Shown: piece by piece, positions 4,201 through 59,400 of the stretch | Layout: every line of letters starts with the position of its first letter | Numbering within the stretch: position 1 is the stretch's first letter | Assembly: GCA_904063045.1 (NCBI GenBank) | Contig: CAJFCJ010000008.1 | Location: forward strand, 744,001-808,000 | Direction: 5' to 3' | Origin: Dimorphilus gyrociliatus | Lineage: Eukaryota > Animalia > Annelida | DNA: 64,000 bases | Notes under the pieces: model-generated | Told to the model about the DNA's origin: nothing | The model's database searches: none | What the model saw: the letters and a program-made list of their open reading frames with translations, nothing else | Position numbers and translations under genes: made by a program

Positions 4201-4841
4201 GAGAGAGAGAGGGTGAGAGAATGAAGAGGGAAACGAGAGAGTGAGAATGCGAAAGAGCAAAGGAATCTATGATAAATGTTGCAAATTTTATCATAACATT
4301 TCGTTTAAAGTCAGCTCCCTTTACTACTTGATTATCTCAATATCTGCCAAATGGTCAATTAATTTTTCAACCATTTGTTTCTCATACAAATTTCCCTTTT
4401 GTTTATTTGACTAACTTGTCTTATTGAAACGAGCGAAAAGTGCCTTGATTATTTATAACCCATCATTTGTCACGTTGTAGGGTTCCTTGTTGCGAATAAA
4501 GAAACTAATCGAACACATTGCAATGATTGTGACAAATCATAAATACCTTTTCCATTCCTAAGCTTCCGGTTACTCCATTCCTAAATTATTTATTGGATGG
4601 TGAAGCTGAGATTTTAAAACGTATTTTATATAATATTATTTTTAGAATTGACCTTTATTTCTTCTCTTTGTATTGAAAATTCTATAACCTATCTCTTAAA
4701 ATGATTACTGATATATTTCATATATTCTATTGTCTGTTTGATTCACTGTCTAATGATTGGTAAAACGTTTTACCAGGTGGCGCTTCCACATTTTACTTTT
4801 TTATAGGCAAAAACGAGAGTGTCGTCTCCAGCTACTAGTCG

Positions 4842-6020
4842 ATGGCTAACAAAGTAACTCTTGAGGATATCGTAGAAAATTTTTGTTCAAATTTCTCGGA
4901 AGGATCTTGGCAGCATTCCGGAGGAACAACACCAAGCAATGTGACTTACGTGTATTTACCCCTTTTGCAACTTTCATTGGGGGTTCCCCTTATTATTATA
5001 TGTTTAATTGTTCTTAAAAGATTCCACTCAGGTAGAACTAAAGCGTATTTTTTGTTAAGATTGTTAGCTTTATCGGACTTAGCAGCATTGATCATGTATG
5101 TAGCGACGATGCTCTATCATTGGGTAGTCGCAAAAAGCTTAAAAACTGATAACACCTATAATATACTTAAAGGTTTTTCACATGCCGGGGTTCTCTGGAC
5201 AACATGGACAGCGGTAATTGTCGGTTTGGAACGCTGCATTGCTGTGTGCCGACCAATTCAATCTAGAATCTTCAAGACAAGATCAGTTGTAATTATTATT
5301 GCTGCTATACATATCTTTGCAACTACTTTGTACGGTTGTCATGCGGCTATCAATTGGACATTTCAATCGAAAGCGAATGACATAGATGTGTCTACAAATC
5401 GTCCTGAATTAACCGCGTTTTTAATGAATAGATGCAGCAGTAACAACAATGAAGTCAGATATTTAGTCAACTCCAGAGTAAGAATAGTTTTGGTTCAAAT
5501 ATTTGATATATTTATTCTGGCCACCGGATATATTATACCTATTTTCCTTTTGGCTGTTGTGGACGTTCAAATCGTTAGAAAACTTCGACAACTCCAAAAA
5601 AACGGCCCGGATAAAGCCAGGGGAGCTGTCAATTCTAAGAGGGCGACGAAAGTTGTTGCCGCTTCAGTTTTTGTCCATTGCACGTGCTTAATACCTATGG
5701 CAGCACTTCACGTGATAACTATTATAAATAGTGAGTTAAAAAATGACGCTTTTAAACTAATAGTTGACGCCTTACTTCATTTGCATACAATATTAACTTT
5801 ACCTGCTTACTGTGCAGTGGGAAAGTCTTTTAGAGCAGCTTTAAAGACATTTGCATCTTGCGCTCCATCTGCACACAACAGTCCAACTAACATGGAAGGA
5901 TCAGTGACGAGGTCAAGTTTTGTTTCAATGAGTACAATGAGTAGTACCAGAGGATCATTGAAATTCAAATTGATAAGAAGAGGAGAAAGTAAAAATAAGG
6001 AATGCTTAATAAAGAGATAA
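4842..6020 (+). CDS. Single-exon class A (rhodopsin-like) GPCR, peptide-receptor-like, divergent motifs
   Basis: 392-aa ORF with seven hydrophobic segments, LALSD (TM2), LERCIAVCRP (TM3), CLIP (TM6) and N-terminal N-glycosylation sequons (NFS, NVT). Confidence 0.9.
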   Translation: MANKVTLEDIVENFCSNFSEGSWQHSGGTTPSNVTYVYLPLLQLSLGVPLIIICLIVLKRFHSGRTKAYFLLRLLALSDLAALIMYVATMLYHWVVAKSLKTDNTYNILKGFSHAGVLWTTWTAVIVGLERCIAVCRPIQSRIFKTRSVVIIIAAIHIFATTLYGCHAAINWTFQSKANDIDVSTNRPELTAFLMNRCSSNNNEVRYLVNSRVRIVLVQIFDIFILATGYIIPIFLLAVVDVQIVRKLRQLQKNGPDKARGAVNSKRATKVVAASVFVHCTCLIPMAALHVITIINSELKNDAFKLIVDALLHLHTILTLPAYCAVGKSFRAALKTFASCAPSAHNSPTNMEGSVTRSSFVSMSTMSSTRGSLKFKLIRRGESKNKECLIKR

Positions 6021-7022: not shown

Positions 7023-8253
7023 ATGGGAAATTGTATGACACCTAAAGAAAACATTAGTGCTGCTGAAAAGCTAGTGTTCTACGTAAATATTTACGTTGAT
7101 GGAATCATATCTGTTGCTGGGATTTTCGGCAATATACTTATTCTATTAACGTTGAAAAATACCCCTCACGTTAGTTCATATACAATCTATATACGCGTAT
7201 TGGCTTTTGTAGAAGTTATATTTGTTGCTTATTGCCTCTTATATACGACATTCAGAACGGCTGCCAAGTAAGTAAAACAATAATAAAAAAGAAAGAAAAA
7301 GCAACTGCTTTTCTCTGCCTAAGAATAGATAGAGCTTTTTCCGGGAACATTGACGGAGAATAAGCTGAAAACGAGGGCAAGTTATTTAAGCATTGTTTTA
7401 TCTTTTTCTCCCTAACAGATATACTGATTGTATGGCAAATTATTTAAAGGCAGAGCCGATATTAGTGTCGGTTGCTCTACCGATAGCGTGGATGCTACAA
7501 ACTTCTAGTATTTGGATAACGGCTATGTTGGCTGTAGATAGAAGAATTGCGGTGGATAAACCTTTAAAATCGCTAACGTTTTGTACATCAATCATAGCTA
7601 AGAGAGTTTCAGCGCTCACTATTTTGGGATGTGTTCTGTTTAACACTCCAAGATTCGCTTATTACTCTGCCGTTTCGAAACTTGAAACAAATGCTTCATA
7701 TGTTCATATTGCCCATCTGAGAGTTAACTTACCTGGATGGGATGCCTCCATTTACTATTGGCTTTATCATGTTGGATTAACTTTTGCCCTTGTCTTCATA
7801 TTACCGTTAGGTATAATTGCAGTATGCGACGTTTATCTGGTAAAAGCTTTAAGGAAAGCTGATAAATTTCGTCAATTACACGCTAGAGAGAGTAAGAATA
7901 AAGTTCTAAAAACACCTGTTCCTGTTTCAAGAACAATAGTTGTAAATATGGTTGTCGTCATTTCAAAATTATTAATTTGTCAAACTCCTGATTTTTTGAT
8001 GGGTATCGCCCAAGCAGCAAGAGTTGATAGAAATGCAGCCGCGTACAAGATATTTTCAACGTTAAAAGAAATGCTACTTATAATTAGTGCGTCTGCAAAC
8101 TGTTATATATATTTAATCCTGAACAAATATTTTAGAAGATCTGCCAAAGCAATAACGTTAAAAATTTTCAAACCTTGTAGGCAACGAAACAATGATTCTA
8201 CACAAACACATAGTCAGTTCACTGACCTTGGCCGAATATCGACAATTAACTGA
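7023..8253 (+). CDS. Two-exon class A GPCR, FMRFamide/peptide-receptor-like
   Basis: Exon 7023-7267, intron 7268-7418 (GTAAGT..TAACAG), exon 7419-8253, joined in frame (TAAK|YTDC). Motifs GIFGN (TM1), SIWITAMLAVDRRIAVDKP (TM3), LFNTPRF (TM4), CQTP (TM6), SANCYIY (TM7). Confidence 0.9.
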
Positions 8254-49138: not shown

Positions 49139-52100
49139 ATGAATAGTGAATACGAACTTAAGCGTCGATCATCTTCTCCAGAGAGTCCCCCCCATCGTCG
49201 TCGGCGAGGTGAAAGCTCGAATAAAGAGTTGAAAAGGATAGATTATGTTTTGATATATGAACTGGACGAGGAAGAAAAAGATGATGCTAAAACGCAGGAA
49301 AAAAATAAGTTAAGGAATAAATTTAAGGTAGGATAACACAAAGAATAAGGTAATTCATTAAAATAGTTGGAGTCTTTCCCAACCGCCAATACAGGAAGCC
49401 ATTTGGGAAGAAGGTCTTGAGATGCAAGAAGATGAGATTACAGATTCGAAAAATTTTGATAAAAAAAATATATTCATTAAAATACATGTTCCATTTGAAA
49501 GAATTTGCACGCAGGCGGAAAGAGTGGCCGTAGAAATGAACATTCGAGGGGTAAAGATATTATAAATAATGAATTAATTGTCGTTTAAAGGAAAGATTAC
49601 TTTTTTATATCTTTATAGTTAAGTATACCCGAAGATCCACCACCATCATATCTTGAATGGTTCTATGAATTCGAAAGAAAACATTTAAAAACAGATAACG
49701 AAGGTAAACAAATTGTCAATGAATTTTTATCTCATAAAACGTTCTTTGTTTAAAGAATGTTAATAACTTATTTATTTTTGCTTGAAAATGGGAAGAGCTT
49801 AATTGATTCATTATCCTCTTCGCAACAATTTTAACTGTAAATTGGCCAATTAGTGACAAATTTAAAAAGTAAAAAGAATTCCATTAACATTTTTTTTTTA
49901 GCAAAAAAGATATTCACTATAGATGGAAGAAGCGTTGAAAGATATACAGGTGTCATAGTGTCTTTCTTAAATGTATAGCACAATAATAAGACTAGATCAA
50001 TCAATTAATTAATTAGCTAATTGATTAATTATCACTGTATACTATCTTTAAATGGTTATTTTTTGTTATTATTGTTTTAATAACACAAGTTTCGGGTTCT
50101 TTTTGGTTAAAACATTATTGTTCTAGTTTCTTTTAGTTAGCAAGATTTTAATTTATTCAAGGCTTTTATCTATTTAATATTCACTCATAATATTGTTGTA
50201 TCTTTTGGAGTCGGGCTTTTATAAATTTGGTAATGGAAACTATAAAATTAATTCGTTCTATTGAATTCATTACAGTTGATAGTGTTGCAACGACATTCGA
50301 GAAGGAAAAAATGAAGATATTTGAAAACCATAGCGATGTAAATACATTCTTTAGGCCGGCCTTGCGATGCTTTCTGGTCTGTGTTAACAACATACACAAT
50401 TATTGTAAATAGATTGATGGATTCTATTGTTTCTTTAGGCAAATGATATTCTTATAAATATTGATATTCGCGATGAAGCAGACAGACAAAATGAACCTTT
50501 AAATAGAAAAGGTATATTTTATTACCTAAAAGGTTCTCTTTATAATAAAGTTCTTAACTAAATATAGGCCTCAAGTATATGCTGATGGAGAAAATTTTTT
50601 TGGATGCTTTTATTATGCACGACGAATCGGATATCGATCCAATGGAAGAGGAAGAAAAAAAGAAAAAGGAAAGAGAATTCGGTTCAAGATTTGTTATAGA
50701 TGATCCACCAGAAGGGAAAAAGTTGATTTTACCAGATACTAGAAAAGAGTTACACGTAAGTATAGAAAACTCTCAACAAAGAATACTCATTTTGGCTAAT
50801 TTATGGGGGCAATTTTTTAGGAGAGTTGGTTAAGATACAGGAAATATCAACCTCTTTGGAAGATTAGAAACTATTTTGGGGAAAAAATATCATTATATTT
50901 TGCTTGGGTAGGAACGCTTATAGTATCTTTATGGATACCAACTTTGCTAGGACTCGCCATATTCTTTTACGGATTGTACTTGAGCATAGAACATAACATT
51001 AACAATACTAATCAGTTGAATGCGACCGATCCTCTGACATTGTATGTATCACACGTATTCAATATATTGTTATCGTTTAATGAAATACTCTATACTTTTA
51101 CTCTATCCCTTATTCGAAAGGACAAAGTCGTACGTTGAAAGGTCTATTCAAGTAATTCGGCAAGCATTTGATAATAAAGTCACTCCGTATTATGCTCTAA
51201 TTATGTGCCTTTGGGGTACTCTCTTCCTTGAGTTTTGGAAACGAAAGAATGCAGAGTTGGCCTATCGTTGGGACGTCGATTACTTTGAAGAAACTGAACC
51301 TGATAGACCCCAGTTCCAAGGGACACAGAAGAAACGAGATCCTGTAACTCAAGAAGAAATCTGGTATTATCCTTTTAAGAGGCAATTATTTAAATTTATG
51401 TTTTCCTTTTCCATATTGATAACTATGGTTCGTAGAGAAAATTGTTCTATAGTTGATGGTAATTAATAGTTTAATAAGCAATTCTCTCTAAATACAGGTG
51501 TTTTTCGTTCTAATTTCTGTTGCCATGGTAATTCTATATCGGGTGTATACAGCCGTCAATCTTTGTTCGGATCCAAAAATTTGTATAATAGTGAACGCCT
51601 TGGTACCAGCACTACTAAATGCTATTTCTATTATGTTACTCGGTAAACTGTATGAGATTTTGGCCTATAAACTAACGAATTGGGGTAAGTCATTTATTTA
51701 AATAAACAGTTTATGTTCTATTTTAATCGTGTATTGTCTTCTTTTGTAGAAAATCATAGAACGCAAACTCAATACGACGACGCCTTAATTATAAAACTGT
51801 TCGCTTTCCAATTTGCCAACAGTTACGCTTCTTTGTTTTATATAGCATTTTTTAGAGGAGTAAGTTGTTATTGGTTAAAAATTTGCGATTAATTAACATC
51901 AAGTAATTTATCCTCTTGTAACTCTTTCCTTAGATTAATTATGGTAAAGATGGAATATTTGGCCTGGGAGAAAAATATACGGACAGTTGCGGAACAGATA
52001 ACAATTGTATGGCAATGCTTTCGCTCCAGGTTCTCGTTCTTATGATAGTTAAACCTCTTCCAAAGTTCTTAAAAGATATTATTTTACCGTAAGTAGAAAT

Positions 52101-55088
52101 GGGCTTAAAAATGGCTGGTAAAAGAGTATTAGCAAGGTTTCTTTCAATTAAAAAAAAAACAGATGGTTACTAAAGAAATGGCGACTACGTAAAATATGTC
52201 GAGGAAAAAGGCGTGTTGACGATACTGAATCTGCTCAAAAGAAGAAGAGTTTAACGCTTCCCGACTTTTTGGAAAGGGAACGTCTTAAACCGGAACTTGG
52301 GGATTTTACACTTGGAGAATATACCGAAAAAGTTTTAATCTATGGCTATTTAATGGTAAATGATATTTATTTTATATTCACGTGAACCTTTTTACGTATT
52401 ATGTAATAATTTATTTCAGATATTTGCGGCTTCATTACCAGTCGCCCCATTGATAGCACTTATTGTATATTTAATCGACATACGAGTAGACGCTGGAAGG
52501 CTTCTCTGGTGGTATAGAAGGCCCATTAGTACCATAGCCCAAGATATCGGTTAGATAGCTCTTGACATAACCGTAATAAACATTCTTATCATTTTCCAAC
52601 CATTCACTTCTATTTTAGGTATGTGGTATGGAATTTTATACGTTTTAAACGTAATAGGAGTAATCAGCAATGCATGCTTGATTGCATTTACATCTCATTG
52701 GGGAAGATCATTTGACGAAACATACAAGAAATTACTTATTGTTATTGGCTTTGAGGTTTGTGATTAAAAATGTTTTTCTTTTTTTTATCATCTTTGATCA
52801 AGAAAAAGCAATTAAATCAACGGCTTAGTTTGTATTATGAAATCCAAGAGAAGATGCTAAAATATGAATTCTCTTTAAAAACAAAAAAATTATTGCAGTT
52901 GTTTAAGTTTCTTCATTTGTTTAGAGAATTTTTCCATCATTTTTTTGTTATTTGTTATAAAAACAAAACAAAATATCATAAATCATTTACAGCATATAGT
53001 GTTTTTCGTCAAATTTGTCATCGATCTTCTCATACCCGACACCCCAGCCTGGGTTTGCCTAAGGCGTCGTAAGGTGATGATCTTTTTGAATTGGTCTAAA
53101 ATTGGATCTCTATTATGTCCTAAAAGCGTTTGACTTGAAAAAATCTTCTTTTATTCATATACTCTTTTTTAGATAACCCATAATCATATTTTATTCAATT
53201 AGTAGAAAGAAAAAGAGAGGGAGAGAGATAAGATTATAATGTATCTAATGGAGAGAAATTGATGAAGTAACTAAAAATAGAGAATTATTTTCTATTTCCT
53301 CTCTTTTGATAAATTACTGGTGAATGAACATGTAGAAATTTTGAATTTGTCGATATACTATCTAACATATCTGATATAACTCTCTTGTGCATGTTTGCTT
53401 TCTAATATTACAGCATATTGTGTTTGCTGTTAAATTTATCATACGAATTTTGGTGCCTGACGTACCTCGCTTCATTCAACGTCGTAGAAGAAGGGTGAGG
53501 ATATATCATGATCTGCTTATATCTGATTTCAATTTCCCTCCTCCTAACCTTTCTCCTTGATATTCTTTATACAAAAACCTATATAAATACCCCTTTCTCT
53601 ACATAATAATTTTCCTCTACCAATAGGAAAAGTATCAAGTTGCAAAAATATTGGAGGCTGCAAGAAGAGATCCGAATATTAATCCAGCTGATGTAGTAAA
53701 GCCGAAAGAACCTGGCGAGTAAGCTCCAGTTAATTACTCTAATTTCCCTTCTACCATTTTCTATTTTATTATCGACTTAATCTTTATATAATTATATTCC
53801 AACTTCTTAGAAAACACCAAAAAACGAGTTATTTAAGTTCTGAAGAAAAGAGTAAGCTATTGGAAAATAATATGGAATTGAGAGAGAGATCGTCAATGGC
53901 TGAAAATTCAGGTAATATTGCTTGTTTTTTTTCAATAAGCTTCATCTTTCGAATTATGATTTACCTGCTCAAAAGGTGCGCTTTCTTGATAGCTAATAGA
54001 ATTGCTCTGATATTTGAAATTAGATTAGTAGTTTTATAGTCTAACTTGAATTAGAAACAAACAAACAAACACAAGAGAAAATTCCAAAAATTGATAACAA
54101 GTTATCAAAAAACAAACAAATAAACAAGCTAAACATTTGATTGATAACAGAAAAAAGAAATCGCTTCTCAATAGGAATGAGGCAAGATTTATTACCTGAA
54201 TGCTTAATCATTTTCAATTGAGCACTTTGATTTATTTGATGCTTTCTGAAGAATTTTACAGAGAAAATTTCGTATTTATTTCTTTATTTATTTATTTCAA
54301 AATTTTTATATATATTTATAAAGAAGAACAAAATAAGGAAGGAGAGTTTTAATTGTTTTTCTTTCCTATTTTCATTAAACAATTCATTTTAGTAGTTAAA
54401 ACGTTGTTTTTTTTATCACGCCACACGGCTTGTCAAAAAGGTATAGGTTTGATAGGGATAAGTACACTCTTTCAAACGAAAAATTAGCTTGAGACGATTC
54501 ATCTTTAATATATTTTCTCTTCTATTTTTGTACCTTTAAGCCATCTTTTTATTCTCATATTATTATTTTTGAATTTATCAATTACAAAATTTTATCCTTT
54601 ATCGCTCGGACTACGTTACACGTTAAAAAATAGGAAAGAAAAAGAAGAAATATAAGTTGAAACCATTGAAAGCTCGAGGAGATCACGAAGAAGAAGTCTA
54701 TAGCGATAATCGACCACTAAACAACAGAAGGTGAAATATTAAAAAGAGAAAAATATTAGTATTAATAATAATAATCATAAAACAAATAATTTACTTTTAT
54801 TTATCATATTTTTTTTATATTTTTTTTATAAAAAAAAATACTACCATTTTCTTCAGAATGTCCAGCGAAAGTATACCAAGGTGATGATGATTTAAAAATA
54901 AAATATGAATAGTTTTATAAGATCGATTAAAACAATGAAAAAGTAGCTCTAACATAAAAAAAACAAACAAAAGGAGAATATTTCGTCTAAAAAAGTAGAA
55001 AAATTTTTAAAATATATCGTTTTTACTTTAGTTTTTTTAACAAAACTAGTTAAAACTTTTAATTTTCTCTCTCTCTCTCTCTCTCTCT

Positions 55089-55132
<44 letters not shown>

Positions 55133-55955
55133 TTCCTCTTCTATATTTAATTTCATTTCATAATTTTGTTTTTCTTTGTTGTTATCATTAAAAAAGAGTG
55201 TTAGCTTATTTTCTTAACATTTTTAAAACGGTATAAAAGGAACAATTTATTAATAGAAAGTATTTTTTTTATGTTGTTTATGGAGTATAAGTCAATTCTT
55301 ACTTGGTTTTTTATTGTTGTTATTAATTCCAATAATATAGTATGAACGGTGCTTATTTTTGGTTTTTTTTGGTTTATTAACTCTAACAGTTTTGTTATCT
55401 AGAAACGAGAAGAAGTAAGGAATTTTTAATTGCTTAACTATTATCGCTTTCATATAATTGCACATTATTGTATGACGTTGTTAATTTTGTAGTATCTATA
55501 GCGTAATTTAGTTTGCTTTTTTTTGGCTCTCTACAGAGAACAGCTGATGGGAAGACAAAACTATATGTAAATATTACCTTTTCTCGATAACAGATAGGCT
55601 TTATTTTGTCATAATAAGAGAATAAGAATGAGTGTGAACGAAAAAGACAGCTAACAACTAATTGTATATCGTGTATAATCTTATTAAGTATAGTCTATAT
55701 ATAAGAAAAGCTTAGTTATGAGTTATGAAAGGTGTTTTTTTTAACAAATACTTCTTCAGAATCTCCTATCAGGATCCGGATGAAGAAACTAAGGAAAACG
55801 AAAAAGCATATATCCGAAGTTTAAAGATGAATCTTGAAACTCAACAATCGAGTCATATTCCAGTTGTTAAACTACGTCATACCGAAGATGACTCTGTTCC
55901 TGCAATCGTTCTTCCTTCTCCTATTTTTCATCCAGATAAAGATAGTGAAGCTTAA
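49139..55955 (+). CDS. ANO: Anoctamin/TMEM16 family channel or scramblase, about 20 exons with alternative exons
   Basis: Spliced segments: RIDYVLIY, FIKIHVPF, QPLWKIRNYFGEKISLYFAW, LWGTLFLEFWKRK, ENHRTQTQYDDALIIKLFAFQFANSYASLFYIAFF, EYTEKVLIYGY..FAASLPVAPLIALI..IDIRVDA, YRRP..AQDIGMW, IGFE|HIVF..IPD..|EKYQV. Last exon 55760-55955. Confidence 0.95.
52993..53073 (+). other. Anoctamin TM10 alternative exon A (HIVFFVKFVIDLLIPDTPAWVCLRRRK)
   Basis: 81 nt, ttacag| acceptor, |gtgatg donor, phase 0/0. Confidence 0.85.
53414..53494 (+). other. Anoctamin TM10 alternative exon B (HIVFAVKFIIRILVPDVPRFIQRRRRR)
   Basis: 81 nt, ttacag| acceptor, |gtgagg donor, phase 0/0; paralogous to exon A. Confidence 0.85.
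55066..55130. repeat. Compound (CT)n(TA)n microsatellite in an anoctamin intron
   Basis: Read directly. Confidence 0.9.
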
Positions 55956-56187
55956 ATAGTAGCTTGTAATGAAACCAGTAGTTTTATGTTTGCAATTGTT
56001 AACAGGAATATTTTTGAGTTCTCCCTGAAAAATTGAAATTATTTCCAATGATGTTTTTTTGTCTTTTACATCTTGTACTTTTATATTCCTTGCTTATGTT
56101 GAAAGAAATTGACATGACAAAAATAAATGTAATAGATGGCGCTGTATAAGTGCGCAAGTTTGTTTCTTAAAAGAATTGGTGACAATC

Positions 56188-56324
56188 GTTTCTAGGTAAC
56201 GAAATTTCTAAGTGGTCTAAACGAAGAATAGGACACCTGTTAACTAACTTCAAAGAAATTTGTAAGACCATTTATGAGGGCCTTGTTAATTGGTAACATA
56301 CGTTATAAAAACTGCGCATGCGCG
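56188..56324 (+). promoter_or_regulatory. Oaz proximal promoter motifs: RFX X-box-like GTTTCTAGGTAAC (56188-56200) and NRF1/EWG-like TGCGCATGCGCG (56313-56324)
   Basis: Motifs read directly 110-245 bp upstream of ATG 56433; function is inferred. Confidence 0.35.
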
Positions 56325-56432
56325 TCGAACTAACAGCGTGGGGTGCGCAGCGGGGTGGAGATATCCCACTGGGAGTTGGCCCTGGCGTGGCCGAACGCTG
56401 CAGTTGTTTAGAAGATTCTACGGCGGTCGGTT

Positions 56433-59400
56433 ATGTCTAGGAGGAAACAGGCCAGACCTAAGGCTCTACACCGGAAATCTACCGACAAACCTCCTCGTCT
56501 CGGTACGTAGACAAACACTAATTATAAATATGAAATAATGACTAGGTTCATAAAATAATATAAGATCTATTCCCTCTATCCCACTTTAACTGATCCTCTC
56601 CGACTATTCGTTTCTAAGAGTAACAGGAAAAGTTGTATGTGACTTTTTTCTTTTCGAAAGTAAATTGCCAGTGAGAAGGAGCTTGAAGAGGAACGATGAA
56701 GCGCATCATATAGATTGCTGGATCGTATATATAATTCGTTTAACTTCGCGTCGCAAAACAAGCGGAATAGAGAGCATTGCTGTAATTGCAACATGCTTCT
56801 ATTCCCTCTGGTATTCGACCGTCATTAGCCGACGAGCGCAGAAACAGTAGGATAATCTACGTCTCTCCTCTAATTACCTATACTATAGGCTCAAACGTCG
56901 CATTACTCATTCGCCGTCGCGAATCCCCCCTAAACTCCCACAGGAGTTTTGCCGAATAAATGTCATTCATTTTTTTCGCTGCGGTAAAAAAAGAAAGAAG
57001 ATGAGAAGTTCACTTAAAAATATATAAATAAGACACAACTAAGTGAAGGGGATTTGAAACGTCGGGTGGTAGGAGGAGAGAAAGAGCGGTAGGGAATAGT
57101 CTAAGAGACTAAGGGAAAAAGAAAGAGAAAAAAACCCCAATCCACCAAGACCCGCGGCATGACACAATCGTTGCCCGGGTAACCGCGGGGAATGGAAGCA
57201 TTAGTTAGCTCCCCGGGGATACTGACGTAAATGTCAGCGACCCTCCAGGGAAGGTAGTACAGTCCGTTTTCGTTTATTGCAGACTGCGAATTATGTGAGA
57301 GAAACTTTAGTGAAGAAAGTGACTTCGACAAACACCGGACGGTTCATTCGAGGAAGGATGGAGTTTACAGCTGTTCCTATTGTTCGGCTCGTTTTAAGAG
57401 GTATATGTATATAGAATTTTTACCTCAGGGAATACGGATCCCTGTGGAGTCGTACGTCTTCCCAACGCCACCTAGGACGGTCGTCTACCGCCAGTCTATT
57501 GGACGCCGACAGTTGGCATTAGTGAGATGGATGCGCGAGTCGAGGGACGCTAAGTAGATGCCGTTCTACATTTTAAGCTCTTTTAAGGTCACGCGACTCG
57601 CTTTTTAACAACGGCTTAGTTTAGTAGAAAGGGTGGGTGGCGGTGTGGAGACGTAACAATTTTATCCCATATTTCCCATGATCGACCACTTTTATTCGTC
57701 TAAGGAGAGTTGCAAAGTTTACTTTATTTAAGAAAGGCGACACCTTACGTCTTGTGCGATCACTAGGGTGTGGCTTTTTGTCTTACATCGTTGGGTGCAG
57801 ACCTCCCATTGGTTTCTACAAGCGTTTATATGTGTAAACTTGCTCAACTAACAGATGCGATCAACTTTCCGCGCACGTTCGTTCGCACGACAAATCTCGA
57901 CCATATACATGCTCCAGATGCGCTTCTTCTTTTCCAACCTTGTCGACTTTTTCTACGCATATAACTTCGCAACATGCCGATTTCTTTCCGGTGGATATAT
58001 GCCCGATCTGTGAGGACTTCTTTGAAGACTTAGAAAACCATTTCTATTCGCACGACCCGCCTTCTGCTCGGGCGAACGATCGATGGCGATCAACTTACGA
58101 ATGCCCTTATAAGCTTTGTCAAAAGAAGAACTTTGTAAATCAGAAAGTATTGGATATTCACATTCATACAATGCACGGTCAAGGTGGACAAGCATATGTT
58201 TGCGAGCTATGTGATGCTGTGTTTCCTACATTTTTTGAACTAGATGAACATTCGAAAGAGGAGCATAGCAAGGTAGAACGAAATGATTCGAATACAATGT
58301 ATTGCTCGCATTGTGCCAAAGCCTTTCCAAACAATCACGCTTTGGCAGAACATGTAAGGGAGTCACATGGAATTTTTATGAGTTTAAAAAGTGAAATTCT
58401 TAGTCCACCTAATATCGAGTCAGAAGAGTCTAAGACTGTCGAATATCCTTGTTCCTCCTGTAACCAAGTTTTCTCTTCTGTTGATCTACTTAATGATCAC
58501 CAATTAGACAAACATACAGAAGTACTCTACAGGTGCGGATTTTGTAAAGAGACTTTAGACTCTAAAGTAGGCTTACGCGTTCATTTTTCAATGAATCATT
58601 CGAATGAACAGCGTTCTTATAAATGCACCGATTGTTCAGCGGCGTTCACAACTGAGATTTTATGGCAAATGCATATGAGACGTCACAATTCAAAGCCCTA
58701 CAGGTGCCTTCTTTGTGATGAAACTTACGCCACGGAAAGAGAATTGGAAGTTCATTCGGTCACTCATAAGAAGACAGTCAAGTGTCCCATTTGCGAGGAA
58801 GCATTCCATGTTGAGTACCTGCTAGATCTTCATCTTCAGACAGCCCATTTCCCTGTCGCCCCATCTCCTGCTAAAAGATCAAAGAAGGAAAGAACCAAAT
58901 GTGAGATTTGCGATGTTCGTTTTCCAGATGAATTAGCACTCGTTCGCCACAGAAGAATAGAACATAAACTCGCTTCATCTGTTTCTCCATCAACGTTAAA
59001 ATGCGTCTACTGTCAAACTGAATGCTTTAATTCTTCCGAATTAGAATTTCATATACAAGAAAAACATGCTCCGCCGCCTATAGTTGCTCACAAATGTAAT
59101 ATTTGTGACAAACTCCTGCCCTCTTCTACTTCACTAGTTCAGCATAAACTTAGCCACGTGACACTTCCGTCCCGCCTCACTTGTTTCGTGTGCCAAGCCT
59201 CTATCGCCGAAAAAGGAGATTTTCTTAATCATTCAAGAGATCATTCCGTGATTGGGAGTAAATGTCTTGTTTGTAGGCAGGCGGTCAATTCCACAGAAGA
59301 ACTTCGATTACATTCTCAACATCACTTTCCGGAAGAGAAATGTTCCAGGTGTCATATTACTCCGACCAATACCGAACCTTCATCACCGAACGAGATGTAT

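What the first reader, a model, noticed from the sequence alone, without database searches (positions are those of the whole stretch)
52993..53494. Tandem duplicated, probably mutually exclusive TM10 exons in an anoctamin: a splice switch at the dimer interface and third Ca2+ site
Seen: after the exon ending ..VIGFE (52755) come two 81-nt phase-0 exons with identical ttacag acceptors: A HIVFFVKFVIDLLIPDTPAWVCLRRRK and B HIVFAVKFIIRILVPDVPRFIQRRRRR. Either joins in frame to the next exon EKYQVAKIL (53627). Including both would duplicate half of a TM helix. Established: TM10 forms the TMEM16 dimer interface, and in TMEM16A the TM2 ExxK motif plus two TM10 acids five residues apart (DxxIPD) form an allosteric third Ca2+ site. 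The TM2 motif is present here (LEFWK). Exon A keeps D-L-L-I-P-D; exon B has R-I-L-V-P-D and a more basic tail. Inference: alternative splicing toggles Ca2+ allostery, lipid binding or dimer partner choice. I know of no described case of mutually exclusive TM10 exons in this family.
Basis: partly seen in the sequence, partly recalled or inferred. Interest (0 to 1): 0.85.

Follow-up and report, generated by a model that had tools for sequence, protein, structure and literature searches.

The report
Swappable TM10 exon pair in anoctamin
An anoctamin (TMEM16) gene of the tiny marine worm Dimorphilus gyrociliatus uses one or the other of two neighbouring 81-base exons, never both in the messages seen, so it makes two proteins that differ beside a regulatory calcium site; other annelids, ribbon worms and a lamp shell carry the same exon cluster.

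Summary
Exons A (52993-53073) and B (53414-53494) are 81 nt, phase 0, share the ttacag acceptor and GT donors, and match at 15 of 27 residues.

RNA contigs show upstream>A>downstream (B skipped) and upstream>B>downstream (A skipped). No A>B joint was listed.

The window is Dimorphilus gyrociliatus. Its GenBank annotation already holds both isoforms: DgyrCDS6968 (A) and DgyrCDS6969 (B).

The same exon is multiplied in tandem in Owenia (3 copies), Lingula (2), Tubulanus (3) and Lineus (5). RefSeq lists isoforms with alternative copies for both nemerteans. I found a single copy in four molluscs, one bryozoan paralogue and a crinoid.

By alignment and an AlphaFold model, the exon encodes the cytosolic half of TM10, the IPD kink and the start of the following helix. 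Its Asp equals TMEM16A D884 and TMEM16F D859. Exon position 11 equals TMEM16A D879, and is D in A and R in B.

The TM2 Glu and Lys and this Asp are invariant in 35 orthologues. Position 11 is among the most diversified sites across the alternative copies.

The functional effect is untested, and the dimer-interface claim is weak. I found no paper describing this. The scan had noted other exon pairs in this genome, but not this one.

The parts
49139..54878 (+). Anoctamin gene (DgyrCDS6966-6969 of Dimorphilus gyrociliatus). The CDS starts at 49139. The 3' part is alternatively spliced, so the end given is that of the 6968 model and is approximate.
   Evidence: tblastn of P0223 gives 100% identity on the exons. 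Pfam PF04547 and PF16178 match. GT..AG joints are seen in RNA contigs.
51227..51241 (+). TM2 motif LEFWK (E391..K394 of P0223), the TM2 half of the third Ca2+ site
   Evidence: Aligns with TMEM16A E425 and K428. E391 and K394 are invariant in 35 orthologues.
52619..52755 (+). Constitutive upstream exon: TM9, the short outer loop and the outer half of TM10 (ends ..VIGFE)
   Evidence: The model shows the TM10 helix at residues 749-773, with the exon boundary at 760/761.
52993..53073 (+). Exon A: alternative inner half of TM10 (..VIDLLIPD..), with D at the position of TMEM16A D879
   Evidence: Spliced 52755>52993 and 53073>53627 in runs X2 and X4. Present in DgyrCDS6968.
53074..53413 (+). Intron between A and B (340 nt), with a purine-rich tract at 53205-53263
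53414..53494 (+). Exon B: alternative inner half of TM10 (..IIRILVPD..), with R at the position of TMEM16A D879 and a more basic tail
   Evidence: Spliced 52755>53414 in X1 and X3, and 53494>53627 in X3. Present in DgyrCDS6969.
53528..53559 (+). Pyrimidine-rich tract downstream of B, complementary to 53217-53263. This is a candidate intronic pairing that would loop out exon B (weak lead).
   Evidence: Duplex of -25.9 kcal/mol. In the intron-against-intron comparison, 6 of 200 shuffles reached the observed energy. There is no comparative support.
53627..53718 (+). Constitutive downstream exon (EKYQVAKIL...), the continuation of the helix after TM10

Best explanation
Shown:
- The two exons are a pair of mutually exclusive exons that arose by tandem exon duplication in an anoctamin/TMEM16 gene of the annelid Dimorphilus gyrociliatus.
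- Each mRNA seen carries A or B between the same flanking exons.
- The gene therefore makes two proteins that are identical except for 27 residues: the inner 13 residues of TM10, the I/V-P-D-x-P kink, and the first 9 residues of the following cytosolic helix (TM10').
- The exon cluster has 2 to 5 copies in annelids, nemerteans and a brachiopod.

Shown by alignment:
- The kink Asp is the third-Ca2+-site Asp (TMEM16A D884, TMEM16F D859) and is kept in both exons.
- The TM2 Glu and Lys are constitutive.
- The residue five positions earlier (TMEM16A D879) is D in A and R in B.

Inferred:
- The two isoforms differ in how TM2 and TM10 are coupled. Isoform A would have a more acidic, Ca2+-binding third site like TMEM16A.
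- Isoform B would have a built-in positive charge that weakens Ca2+ binding there and biases gating. TMEM16A D879K/A mutants do this.
- Further differences would come from the TM10' start.

What keeps the two exons exclusive is unknown. It is not intron shortness, and it is not reading-frame policing.
For: - Sequence, frame and splice sites.
- RNA: an X2 contig runs 52621-52753 | 52991-53071 | 53625-53719 | 53812-53908 (A only). An X3 contig runs 52655-52753 | 53412-53493 | 53626-53711 (B only). An X1 contig joins 52653-52753 | 53412-53493. X4 shows joints 52753>52991 and 53071>53625.
- Deposited isoforms carry A (P0223) or B (P0322), and none carries both.
- Conservation: tandem copies with AG/GT flanks occur in Lingula, Lineus, Tubulanus and Owenia. 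RefSeq lists isoforms with alternative copies in both nemerteans.
- Selection: pS 0.69 against pN 0.38 between A and B.
- Structure mapping.
- Position 11 has an entropy of 2.61 bits among alternative copies against 1.05 among single-copy orthologues, while the Asp is kept in 13 of 14 copies.
- TMEM16A mutant data: D879A/K enhance and D884A/K reduce activation, and the acidic residues are needed for third-site Ca2+ sensing (PMC7786149).
Against: - The RNA evidence comes from assembled contigs, not raw reads. Three runs are metatranscriptomes at 97-99.5% identity. Levels, tissues and rare forms cannot be read from them.
- Seven joints were not displayed, so a minor A+B or skip-both form is not excluded. 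RefSeq models a two-copy form in Tubulanus and a skip form in Lineus.
- In single-copy orthologues, position 11 is usually Ala. In TMEM16F and TMEM16K that position contributes only a main-chain carbonyl, so the side chain may matter less than it does in TMEM16A.
- In this orthogroup the TM6 ligands of the primary Ca2+ site are replaced by K, F and D, so its Ca2+ dependence is itself uncertain.
- No function has been measured.
Confidence: 0.72

Rival explanations
1. The mutually exclusive splicing is real, but the relevant difference lies in the start of TM10' and its basic tail, not in the third Ca2+ site. That segment could change inter-subunit contact with the TM2-TM3 loop, PI(4,5)P2 binding, trafficking or partner binding.
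For: - Positions 19-25 of the exon are also strongly diversified among copies.
- According to the review, replacing or truncating the region after TM10 alters the Ca2+ sensitivity of TMEM16A, and TM10' contacts the TM2-3 loop of the other subunit (PMC8640346).
- The tail is RRRK in A and RRRRR in B.
Against: Positions 11 and 12, next to the Ca2+-binding Asp, are among the most diversified sites relative to single-copy orthologues. The D to R change is a charge reversal at a site with a known phenotype in TMEM16A. The two readings do not exclude each other.
Confidence: 0.3
2. The two exons are functionally equivalent. The pair is kept only because splicing choice is tied to cell type or stage, that is, regulatory subfunctionalisation without a biophysical difference.
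For: No functional data exist. Many genes of this genome carry such exon pairs according to earlier notes of this scan, which suggests a general tendency of the lineage.
Against: The copies have diverged at 12 of 27 residues, including a charge reversal. The helix-forming and Ca2+-binding residues have stayed fixed over a divergence that has nearly saturated synonymous sites. Clusters of 2-5 diversified copies persist in three phyla.
Confidence: 0.1
3. One exon is a decaying or unused copy, and the B-containing or A-containing contigs come from other strains or species. Alternatively, both exons are normally included together.
For: The metatranscriptome contigs are only 97-99.5% identical to the window. 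Two-copy gene models exist for Lingula and Tubulanus.
Against: - Both exons lie in the same genome window with intact frames and splice sites.
- Both isoforms were deposited from the genome project of this strain.
- The contigs join each exon directly to both shared flanking exons.
- Including both would put a second copy of the half helix into TM10.
Confidence: 0.03

Closest known systems
Mutually exclusive exon pairs and clusters made by tandem exon duplication in channel genes (for example CaV1.2 exons 8/8a)
   Same: The exons are adjacent, homologous, of the same length and in the same phase. Each encodes an alternative version of part of a membrane helix, and one is used per transcript. 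The CaV1.2 8/8a pair is cited.
   Different: This is a different protein family. I found no paper for any anoctamin. Both exons are multiples of three, so inclusion of both or neither would stay in frame and could not be removed by nonsense-mediated decay. The intron between them is 340 nt, so steric exclusion does not apply. The exclusion mechanism is unknown.
Third Ca2+ site of TMEM16A/F/K (TM2 E..K plus the TM10 acids; Le and Yang 2020, PMC7786149)
   Same: The TM2 Glu and Lys and the TM10 Asp are present and invariant in the orthogroup. Exon A also has the second TM10 acid, with D-x-x-I-P-D spacing as in TMEM16A.
   Different: Here the second position is switched by splicing, to D or R. 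Single-copy relatives mostly have Ala there, as TMEM16K does. Ca2+ binding has not been tested.
Known alternative splicing of vertebrate TMEM16A (segments a, b, c, d) that tunes Ca2+ and voltage sensitivity
   Same: Splicing is used to tune the gating of an anoctamin. (This statement rests on my own knowledge. A review that covers TMEM16 regulation is listed.)
   Different: Those are cassette segments in cytosolic regions, not homologous either/or exons inside a transmembrane helix.
Orthologous exon clusters in Owenia fusiformis, Lingula anatina, Tubulanus polymorphus and Lineus longissimus
   Same: The exon sits at the same position, has the same 81-nt length and phase, and keeps the same invariant H, P-D and P residues. 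There are 2-5 tandem copies. RefSeq lists isoforms with alternative copies in both nemerteans.
   Different: The copy number and the order of canonical and divergent copies differ between species. One-to-one orthology of the copies could not be resolved with 27 columns.

Membership tests
Anoctamin / TMEM16 | Pfam Anoctamin domain plus the N-terminal Anoct_dimer domain | tested here: met
   PF04547 matches at 427 bits and PF16178 at 90 bits, for both isoforms.
Anoctamin / TMEM16 | Sequence similarity to solved TMEM16 structures across TM2-TM10 | tested here: met
   TMEM16F matches at E 6e-37 and TMEM16A at 1e-32 over residues 455-720.
Anoctamin / TMEM16 | Primary Ca2+ site ligands in TM6-TM8 (TMEM16F N620, N621, E624, E667, E670, E699, D703) | tested here: inconclusive
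   The TM7 E..E and the TM8 acids are kept (as D...D). The TM6 positions read K, F and D in this protein, and K, F or L, and D in the orthologues that could be checked.
Mutually exclusive exon cluster from tandem exon duplication | Adjacent exons of equal length and phase with detectable homology and their own splice sites | tested here: met
   Both are 81 nt and phase 0, with 15/27 identity and AG/GT flanks.
Mutually exclusive exon cluster from tandem exon duplication | Transcripts carry exactly one of the exons | tested here: met
   Contigs with A only and with B only are each joined to both shared flanks, and deposited isoforms agree. Rare double inclusion or skipping is not excluded, because 7 joints were not displayed.
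Mutually exclusive exon cluster from tandem exon duplication | Both copies maintained by selection and conserved in other species | tested here: met
   pS is 0.69 against pN 0.38. Clusters occur in two annelids, two nemerteans and a brachiopod.
Mutually exclusive exon cluster from tandem exon duplication | A known exclusion mechanism: steric hindrance, U2/U12 incompatibility, frame policing by NMD, or competing RNA pairing | tested here: inconclusive
   The 340-nt intron and GT-AG sites argue against the first two. An 81-nt length rules out frame policing. One candidate intron pairing is only weakly above shuffles.
TMEM16 third Ca2+ site | TM2 Glu and Lys (E-x-x-K) and the TM10 Asp of the I-P-D kink | tested here: met
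   E391, K394 and D776 are invariant in 35 orthologues and align with E425 and K428 of TMEM16A and D859 of TMEM16F.
TMEM16 third Ca2+ site | A second TM10 acid five residues before the Asp (TMEM16A D879) | tested here: inconclusive
   It is met in exon A (D) and not met in exon B (R). This acid is not a general feature of the family: TMEM16F has S854 and TMEM16K has A610.
TMEM16 third Ca2+ site | Ca2+ actually binds there and modulates gating | not testable with these tools
   This needs electrophysiology, scrambling assays or a structure.

The most novel reading that the evidence does not exclude
An old exon cluster of annelids, nemerteans and brachiopods acts as a swappable allosteric module of an anoctamin. 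The Ca2+-binding Asp of TM10 is held fixed while its helical neighbour (the TMEM16A D879 position) is switched by splicing among D, R, A, H, G, T and M. In the R versions, the side chain would act as a tethered cation that partly replaces Ca2+ at the third site. One gene would then yield channels or scramblases with different Ca2+ set-points.
Probability: 0.3. Interest if true: 0.7.

Novelty: new member of a known kind. Interest (0 to 1): 0.55.

Why it matters
How the third Ca2+ site is coupled to the TMEM16 gate is named as an open question in the field's own review (PMC8640346). Here evolution has produced ready-made natural variants of exactly that region. They include a D/R charge reversal at the TMEM16A D879 position, kept under selection in two to five versions per gene across three phyla.

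Expressing these isoform pairs would test the allosteric model with native sequences rather than point mutants.

There is also a practical annotation point. Some public gene models (Lingula, Tubulanus X1) string two of the alternative exons together, and others list only one.

Tried and rejected
- PDB searches with single short exons found nothing. Longer pieces worked.
- The representative-library search with the TM2 exon did not return the window's own protein. It was found only with a profile that included window exons.
- P0008 had no genomic record, and P0003 is only a transcript contig.
- A maximum-likelihood tree of the 27-residue exons was unresolved except for the Lineus copies 3 and 4. 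Whether there was one origin or repeated duplication cannot be decided.
- RNAduplex on whole introns gave unrealistic long-range structures. Only the pairing between the A-B intron and the intron after B exceeded shuffles, and only weakly.
- Steric, U12 and NMD explanations of exclusivity were rejected from the sequence itself.
- Four literature searches found no description of either/or exons in anoctamins, and a fifth found none in Dimorphilus. Hits for 'mutually exclusive' concerned CaV1.2.

Full report
**1. The observation**

- Exon A (52993-53073) and exon B (53414-53494) are each 81 nt and open.
- Both are preceded by ...ttacag and followed by GT (GTGATG and GTGAGG).
- The upstream exon ends ..VIGFE at 52755, and the next exon begins EKYQVAKIL at 53627. 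Either exon therefore joins both neighbours in phase 0.
- The two exons share 15 of 27 residues but only 44 of 81 bases.
- No other 27-codon stretch in either strand of the window comes close. The next best is 11/27 and contains stops.
- Exon A has a poor, A-rich polypyrimidine tract. Exon B has a good one.

**2. The gene and the organism**

Exon-by-exon homology and RNA joints define an anoctamin gene on the + strand from about 49.1 kb, with 64-92 nt introns.

A profile search that included window exons returned DgyrCDS6968 of *Dimorphilus gyrociliatus* (P0223). Its exons match the window at 100%, so the window is from this miniature annelid.

Both deposited isoforms match Pfam Anoctamin and Anoct_dimer. 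The closest solved structures are TMEM16F and TMEM16A.

**3. Are the exons used, and one at a time?**

I laid Logan contigs of four runs on 50800-56500.
- **X2** (marine metatranscriptome): one contig covers 52621-52753 | 52991-53071 | 53625-53719 | 53812-53908. That is upstream exon, A, downstream exon, next exon, with B skipped.
- **X3**: one contig covers 52655-52753 | 53412-53493 | 53626-53711. That is upstream exon, B, downstream exon, with A skipped.
- **X1** (coral metatranscriptome): one contig joins 52653-52753 to 53412-53493.
- **X4** (a run of the coded 'organism A', spliced contigs at several hundred-fold depth): this run has the joints 52753>52991 and 53071>53625. It also has depth over exon B but none in the first half of the A-B intron.

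No A>B joint was among the joints shown. Seven weaker joints were not displayed, so a rare double-inclusion form is not excluded.

Independently, the GenBank annotation of this genome holds four models for the gene.
- 6968 carries A.
- 6969 carries B.
- 6966 and 6967 run into the intron after 52755 and stop (..GFEVCD*).
- None carries both exons.

Those outcomes were one exon never used, both always included, and A always terminal.

The limits are as follows. The evidence is from contigs, not reads. Three runs are metatranscriptomes at 97-99.5% identity. Nothing can be said about levels, tissues or stages.

**4. Age and conservation**

Between A and B, synonymous sites are nearly saturated (pS 0.69) while pN is 0.38. 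The duplication is therefore old, and both copies have been kept by selection.

I scanned orthologous loci for 27-codon matches with splice sites.

| Species | Group | Locus | Tandem copies | Start positions |
|---|---|---|---|---|
| *Owenia fusiformis* | annelid | L008 | 3 | 20910, 21653, 22791 |
| *Lingula anatina* | brachiopod | L002 | 2 | 11912, 13073 |
| *Tubulanus polymorphus* | nemertean | L007 | 3 | 10156, 10763, 11287 |
| *Lineus longissimus* | nemertean | L006 | 5 | 12103, 12743, 13275, 13739, 14911 |
| *Littorina*, *Patella* | gastropods | L003, L004 | 1 | - |
| *Liolophura* | chiton | L009 | 1 | - |
| *Mytilus* | bivalve | L011 | 1 | - |
| *Watersipora* (one paralogue) | bryozoan | L010 | 1 | - |
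| *Antedon* | crinoid | L005 | 1 | - |

Isoform sets of several other molluscs, echinoderms and a hemichordate show only one form.

RefSeq already lists isoforms with alternative copies.
- *Tubulanus*: X2 and X3 carry different copies, and X1 has two copies in a row.
- *Lineus*: X1, X2 and X3 carry three different copies, and X6 has none.

An old *Lingula* model strings both copies together.

A tree of the 27-residue exons is unresolved apart from a recent *Lineus* duplication. I therefore cannot say whether the cluster arose once before annelids, nemerteans and brachiopods split, or several times.

**5. What the exon encodes**

The *Lingula* orthologue aligns to mouse TMEM16F so that the Asp of the I-P-D motif is D859 and the residue five positions before it is S854. 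These are TMEM16A D884 and D879 (PMC7786149; PMC8640346).

The window's LEFWK aligns to TMEM16A E425..K428. In an alignment of 35 orthologues and isoforms, E391, K394 and D776 are invariant.

An AlphaFold2 model of the A isoform was built (pTM 0.74; pLDDT 81-92 over residues 751-790). It places a helix at 749-773, a break at the IPDTP kink, and a second helix at 779-801.

The alternative exon covers residues 761-787. It therefore supplies the inner 13 residues of TM10, the kink, and the first 9 residues of TM10'.

According to the review, the membrane dimer contact is made by the extracellular end of TM10. That end lies in the constitutive upstream exon. The indirect route would be through TM10', which is reported to touch the TM2-TM3 loop of the other subunit.

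**6. What differs between the versions**

I compared 14 alternative copies from five species with 15 single-copy orthologues.
- H1, P15, D16 and P18 of the exon are almost fixed.
- Positions 11, 12, 14, 23 and 24 gain the most variability relative to single-copy orthologues. The tail positions 19 and 20 are highly variable in both sets.
- At position 11, single-copy genes mostly have Ala. The alternative copies have D, R, G, H, A, T or M.
- *Dimorphilus* A has D and B has R. *Tubulanus* has R, R and A. Among the four full-length *Lineus* copies scored, one has D, two have A and one has T.
- One *Lineus* copy (13739) has Gly in place of the Asp.

**7. Most likely mechanism**

*Shown:* one gene makes two proteins that differ only in this 27-residue module.

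*Inferred:* the module sets the electrostatics of the TM2-TM10 third Ca2+ site and the start of TM10'.
- In TMEM16A, D879A and the charge reversal D879K enhance activation. D884 mutants reduce it. Removing the acids abolishes Ca2+ sensing at the third site.
- By analogy, isoform A (D771) should bind Ca2+ at this site in the TMEM16A manner.
- Isoform B (R771) should bind Ca2+ there less well and be biased in gating. Arg may pair with E391 or D776.

Three caveats apply.
- In TMEM16F and TMEM16K, this position contributes only a backbone carbonyl.
- The orthogroup's TM6 ligands of the primary site are replaced by K, F or L, and D, so its Ca2+ dependence is itself uncertain.
- No function has been measured.

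How exclusivity is enforced is open.
- The 340-nt intron excludes steric hindrance.
- The splice sites are ordinary GT-AG.
- Both exons are multiples of three, so frame policing cannot act.
- A purine-rich tract in the A-B intron (53217-53263) can pair with a pyrimidine-rich tract after B (53528-53559; -25.9 kcal/mol), which would loop out B. The signal is weak: 6 of 200 shuffles reached the observed energy, and there is no comparative support.

**8. Novelty**

Either/or exons made by tandem duplication are a well-known device, including in channel genes. Four literature searches found no description of this for any anoctamin, and a fifth found none for *Dimorphilus*.

The isoforms themselves are already in GenBank and RefSeq. 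This scan has noted many such exon pairs in other genes of this genome, though not in this one.

I therefore rate it a new member of a known kind. It has moderate interest because the swapped residue sits at a site whose coupling to the gate is an acknowledged open question.

Noticed in passing
window 49901-49948: A 16-residue cassette exon in the N-terminal cytosolic domain. It is present in DgyrCDS6966, 6968 and 6969 and skipped in 6967.
   Followed up: partly
window 53908-55773: The 3' part of the gene is alternatively spliced. Joints 53909>54632, 54728>54855 and 54878>55535 compete with 53908>55534. An unspliced contig covers 53883-54661. The deposited B isoform reads through the 53909 donor and so has a different C-terminus from the A isoform.
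   Followed up: partly
window 52756-52767: Two deposited models (DgyrCDS6966 and 6967) retain the intron after 52755 and stop after three codons (..GFEVCD*), in the middle of TM10. A low-depth unspliced contig (52726-53020, depth 26 against several hundred) fits pre-mRNA rather than a real isoform.
   Followed up: partly
P0223 residues about 595-605 (window exon 51934-52088): The TM6 ligands of the primary Ca2+ site (TMEM16F N620, N621, E624) read K, F and D here. They read K, F or L, and D in the orthologues that could be checked, from echinoderms and a hemichordate to lophotrochozoans. The TM7 and TM8 acids are kept.
   Followed up: partly
L006:13739-13819 (Lineus longissimus): One of the five tandem copies has Gly instead of the otherwise invariant Ca2+-site Asp. 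It is not in any RefSeq isoform seen. It could be a Ca2+-blind version or a decaying copy.
   Followed up: no
L007 (Tubulanus) and L002 (Lingula) gene models: Public models XP_074650544 (isoform X1) and UPI00078A61ED string two alternative TM10 exons together, adding 27 residues. This is probably a gene-model artefact, or it reflects a minor transcript.
   Followed up: partly
window 53205-53263: A conspicuous GA-rich tract lies in the intron between the two exons. It is complementary to a CU-rich tract at 53528-53559 after exon B.
   Followed up: partly
window 4839-6017 and 7390-8250: Long single open frames on the + strand show features typical of seven-helix receptors. I did not examine them.
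   Followed up: no
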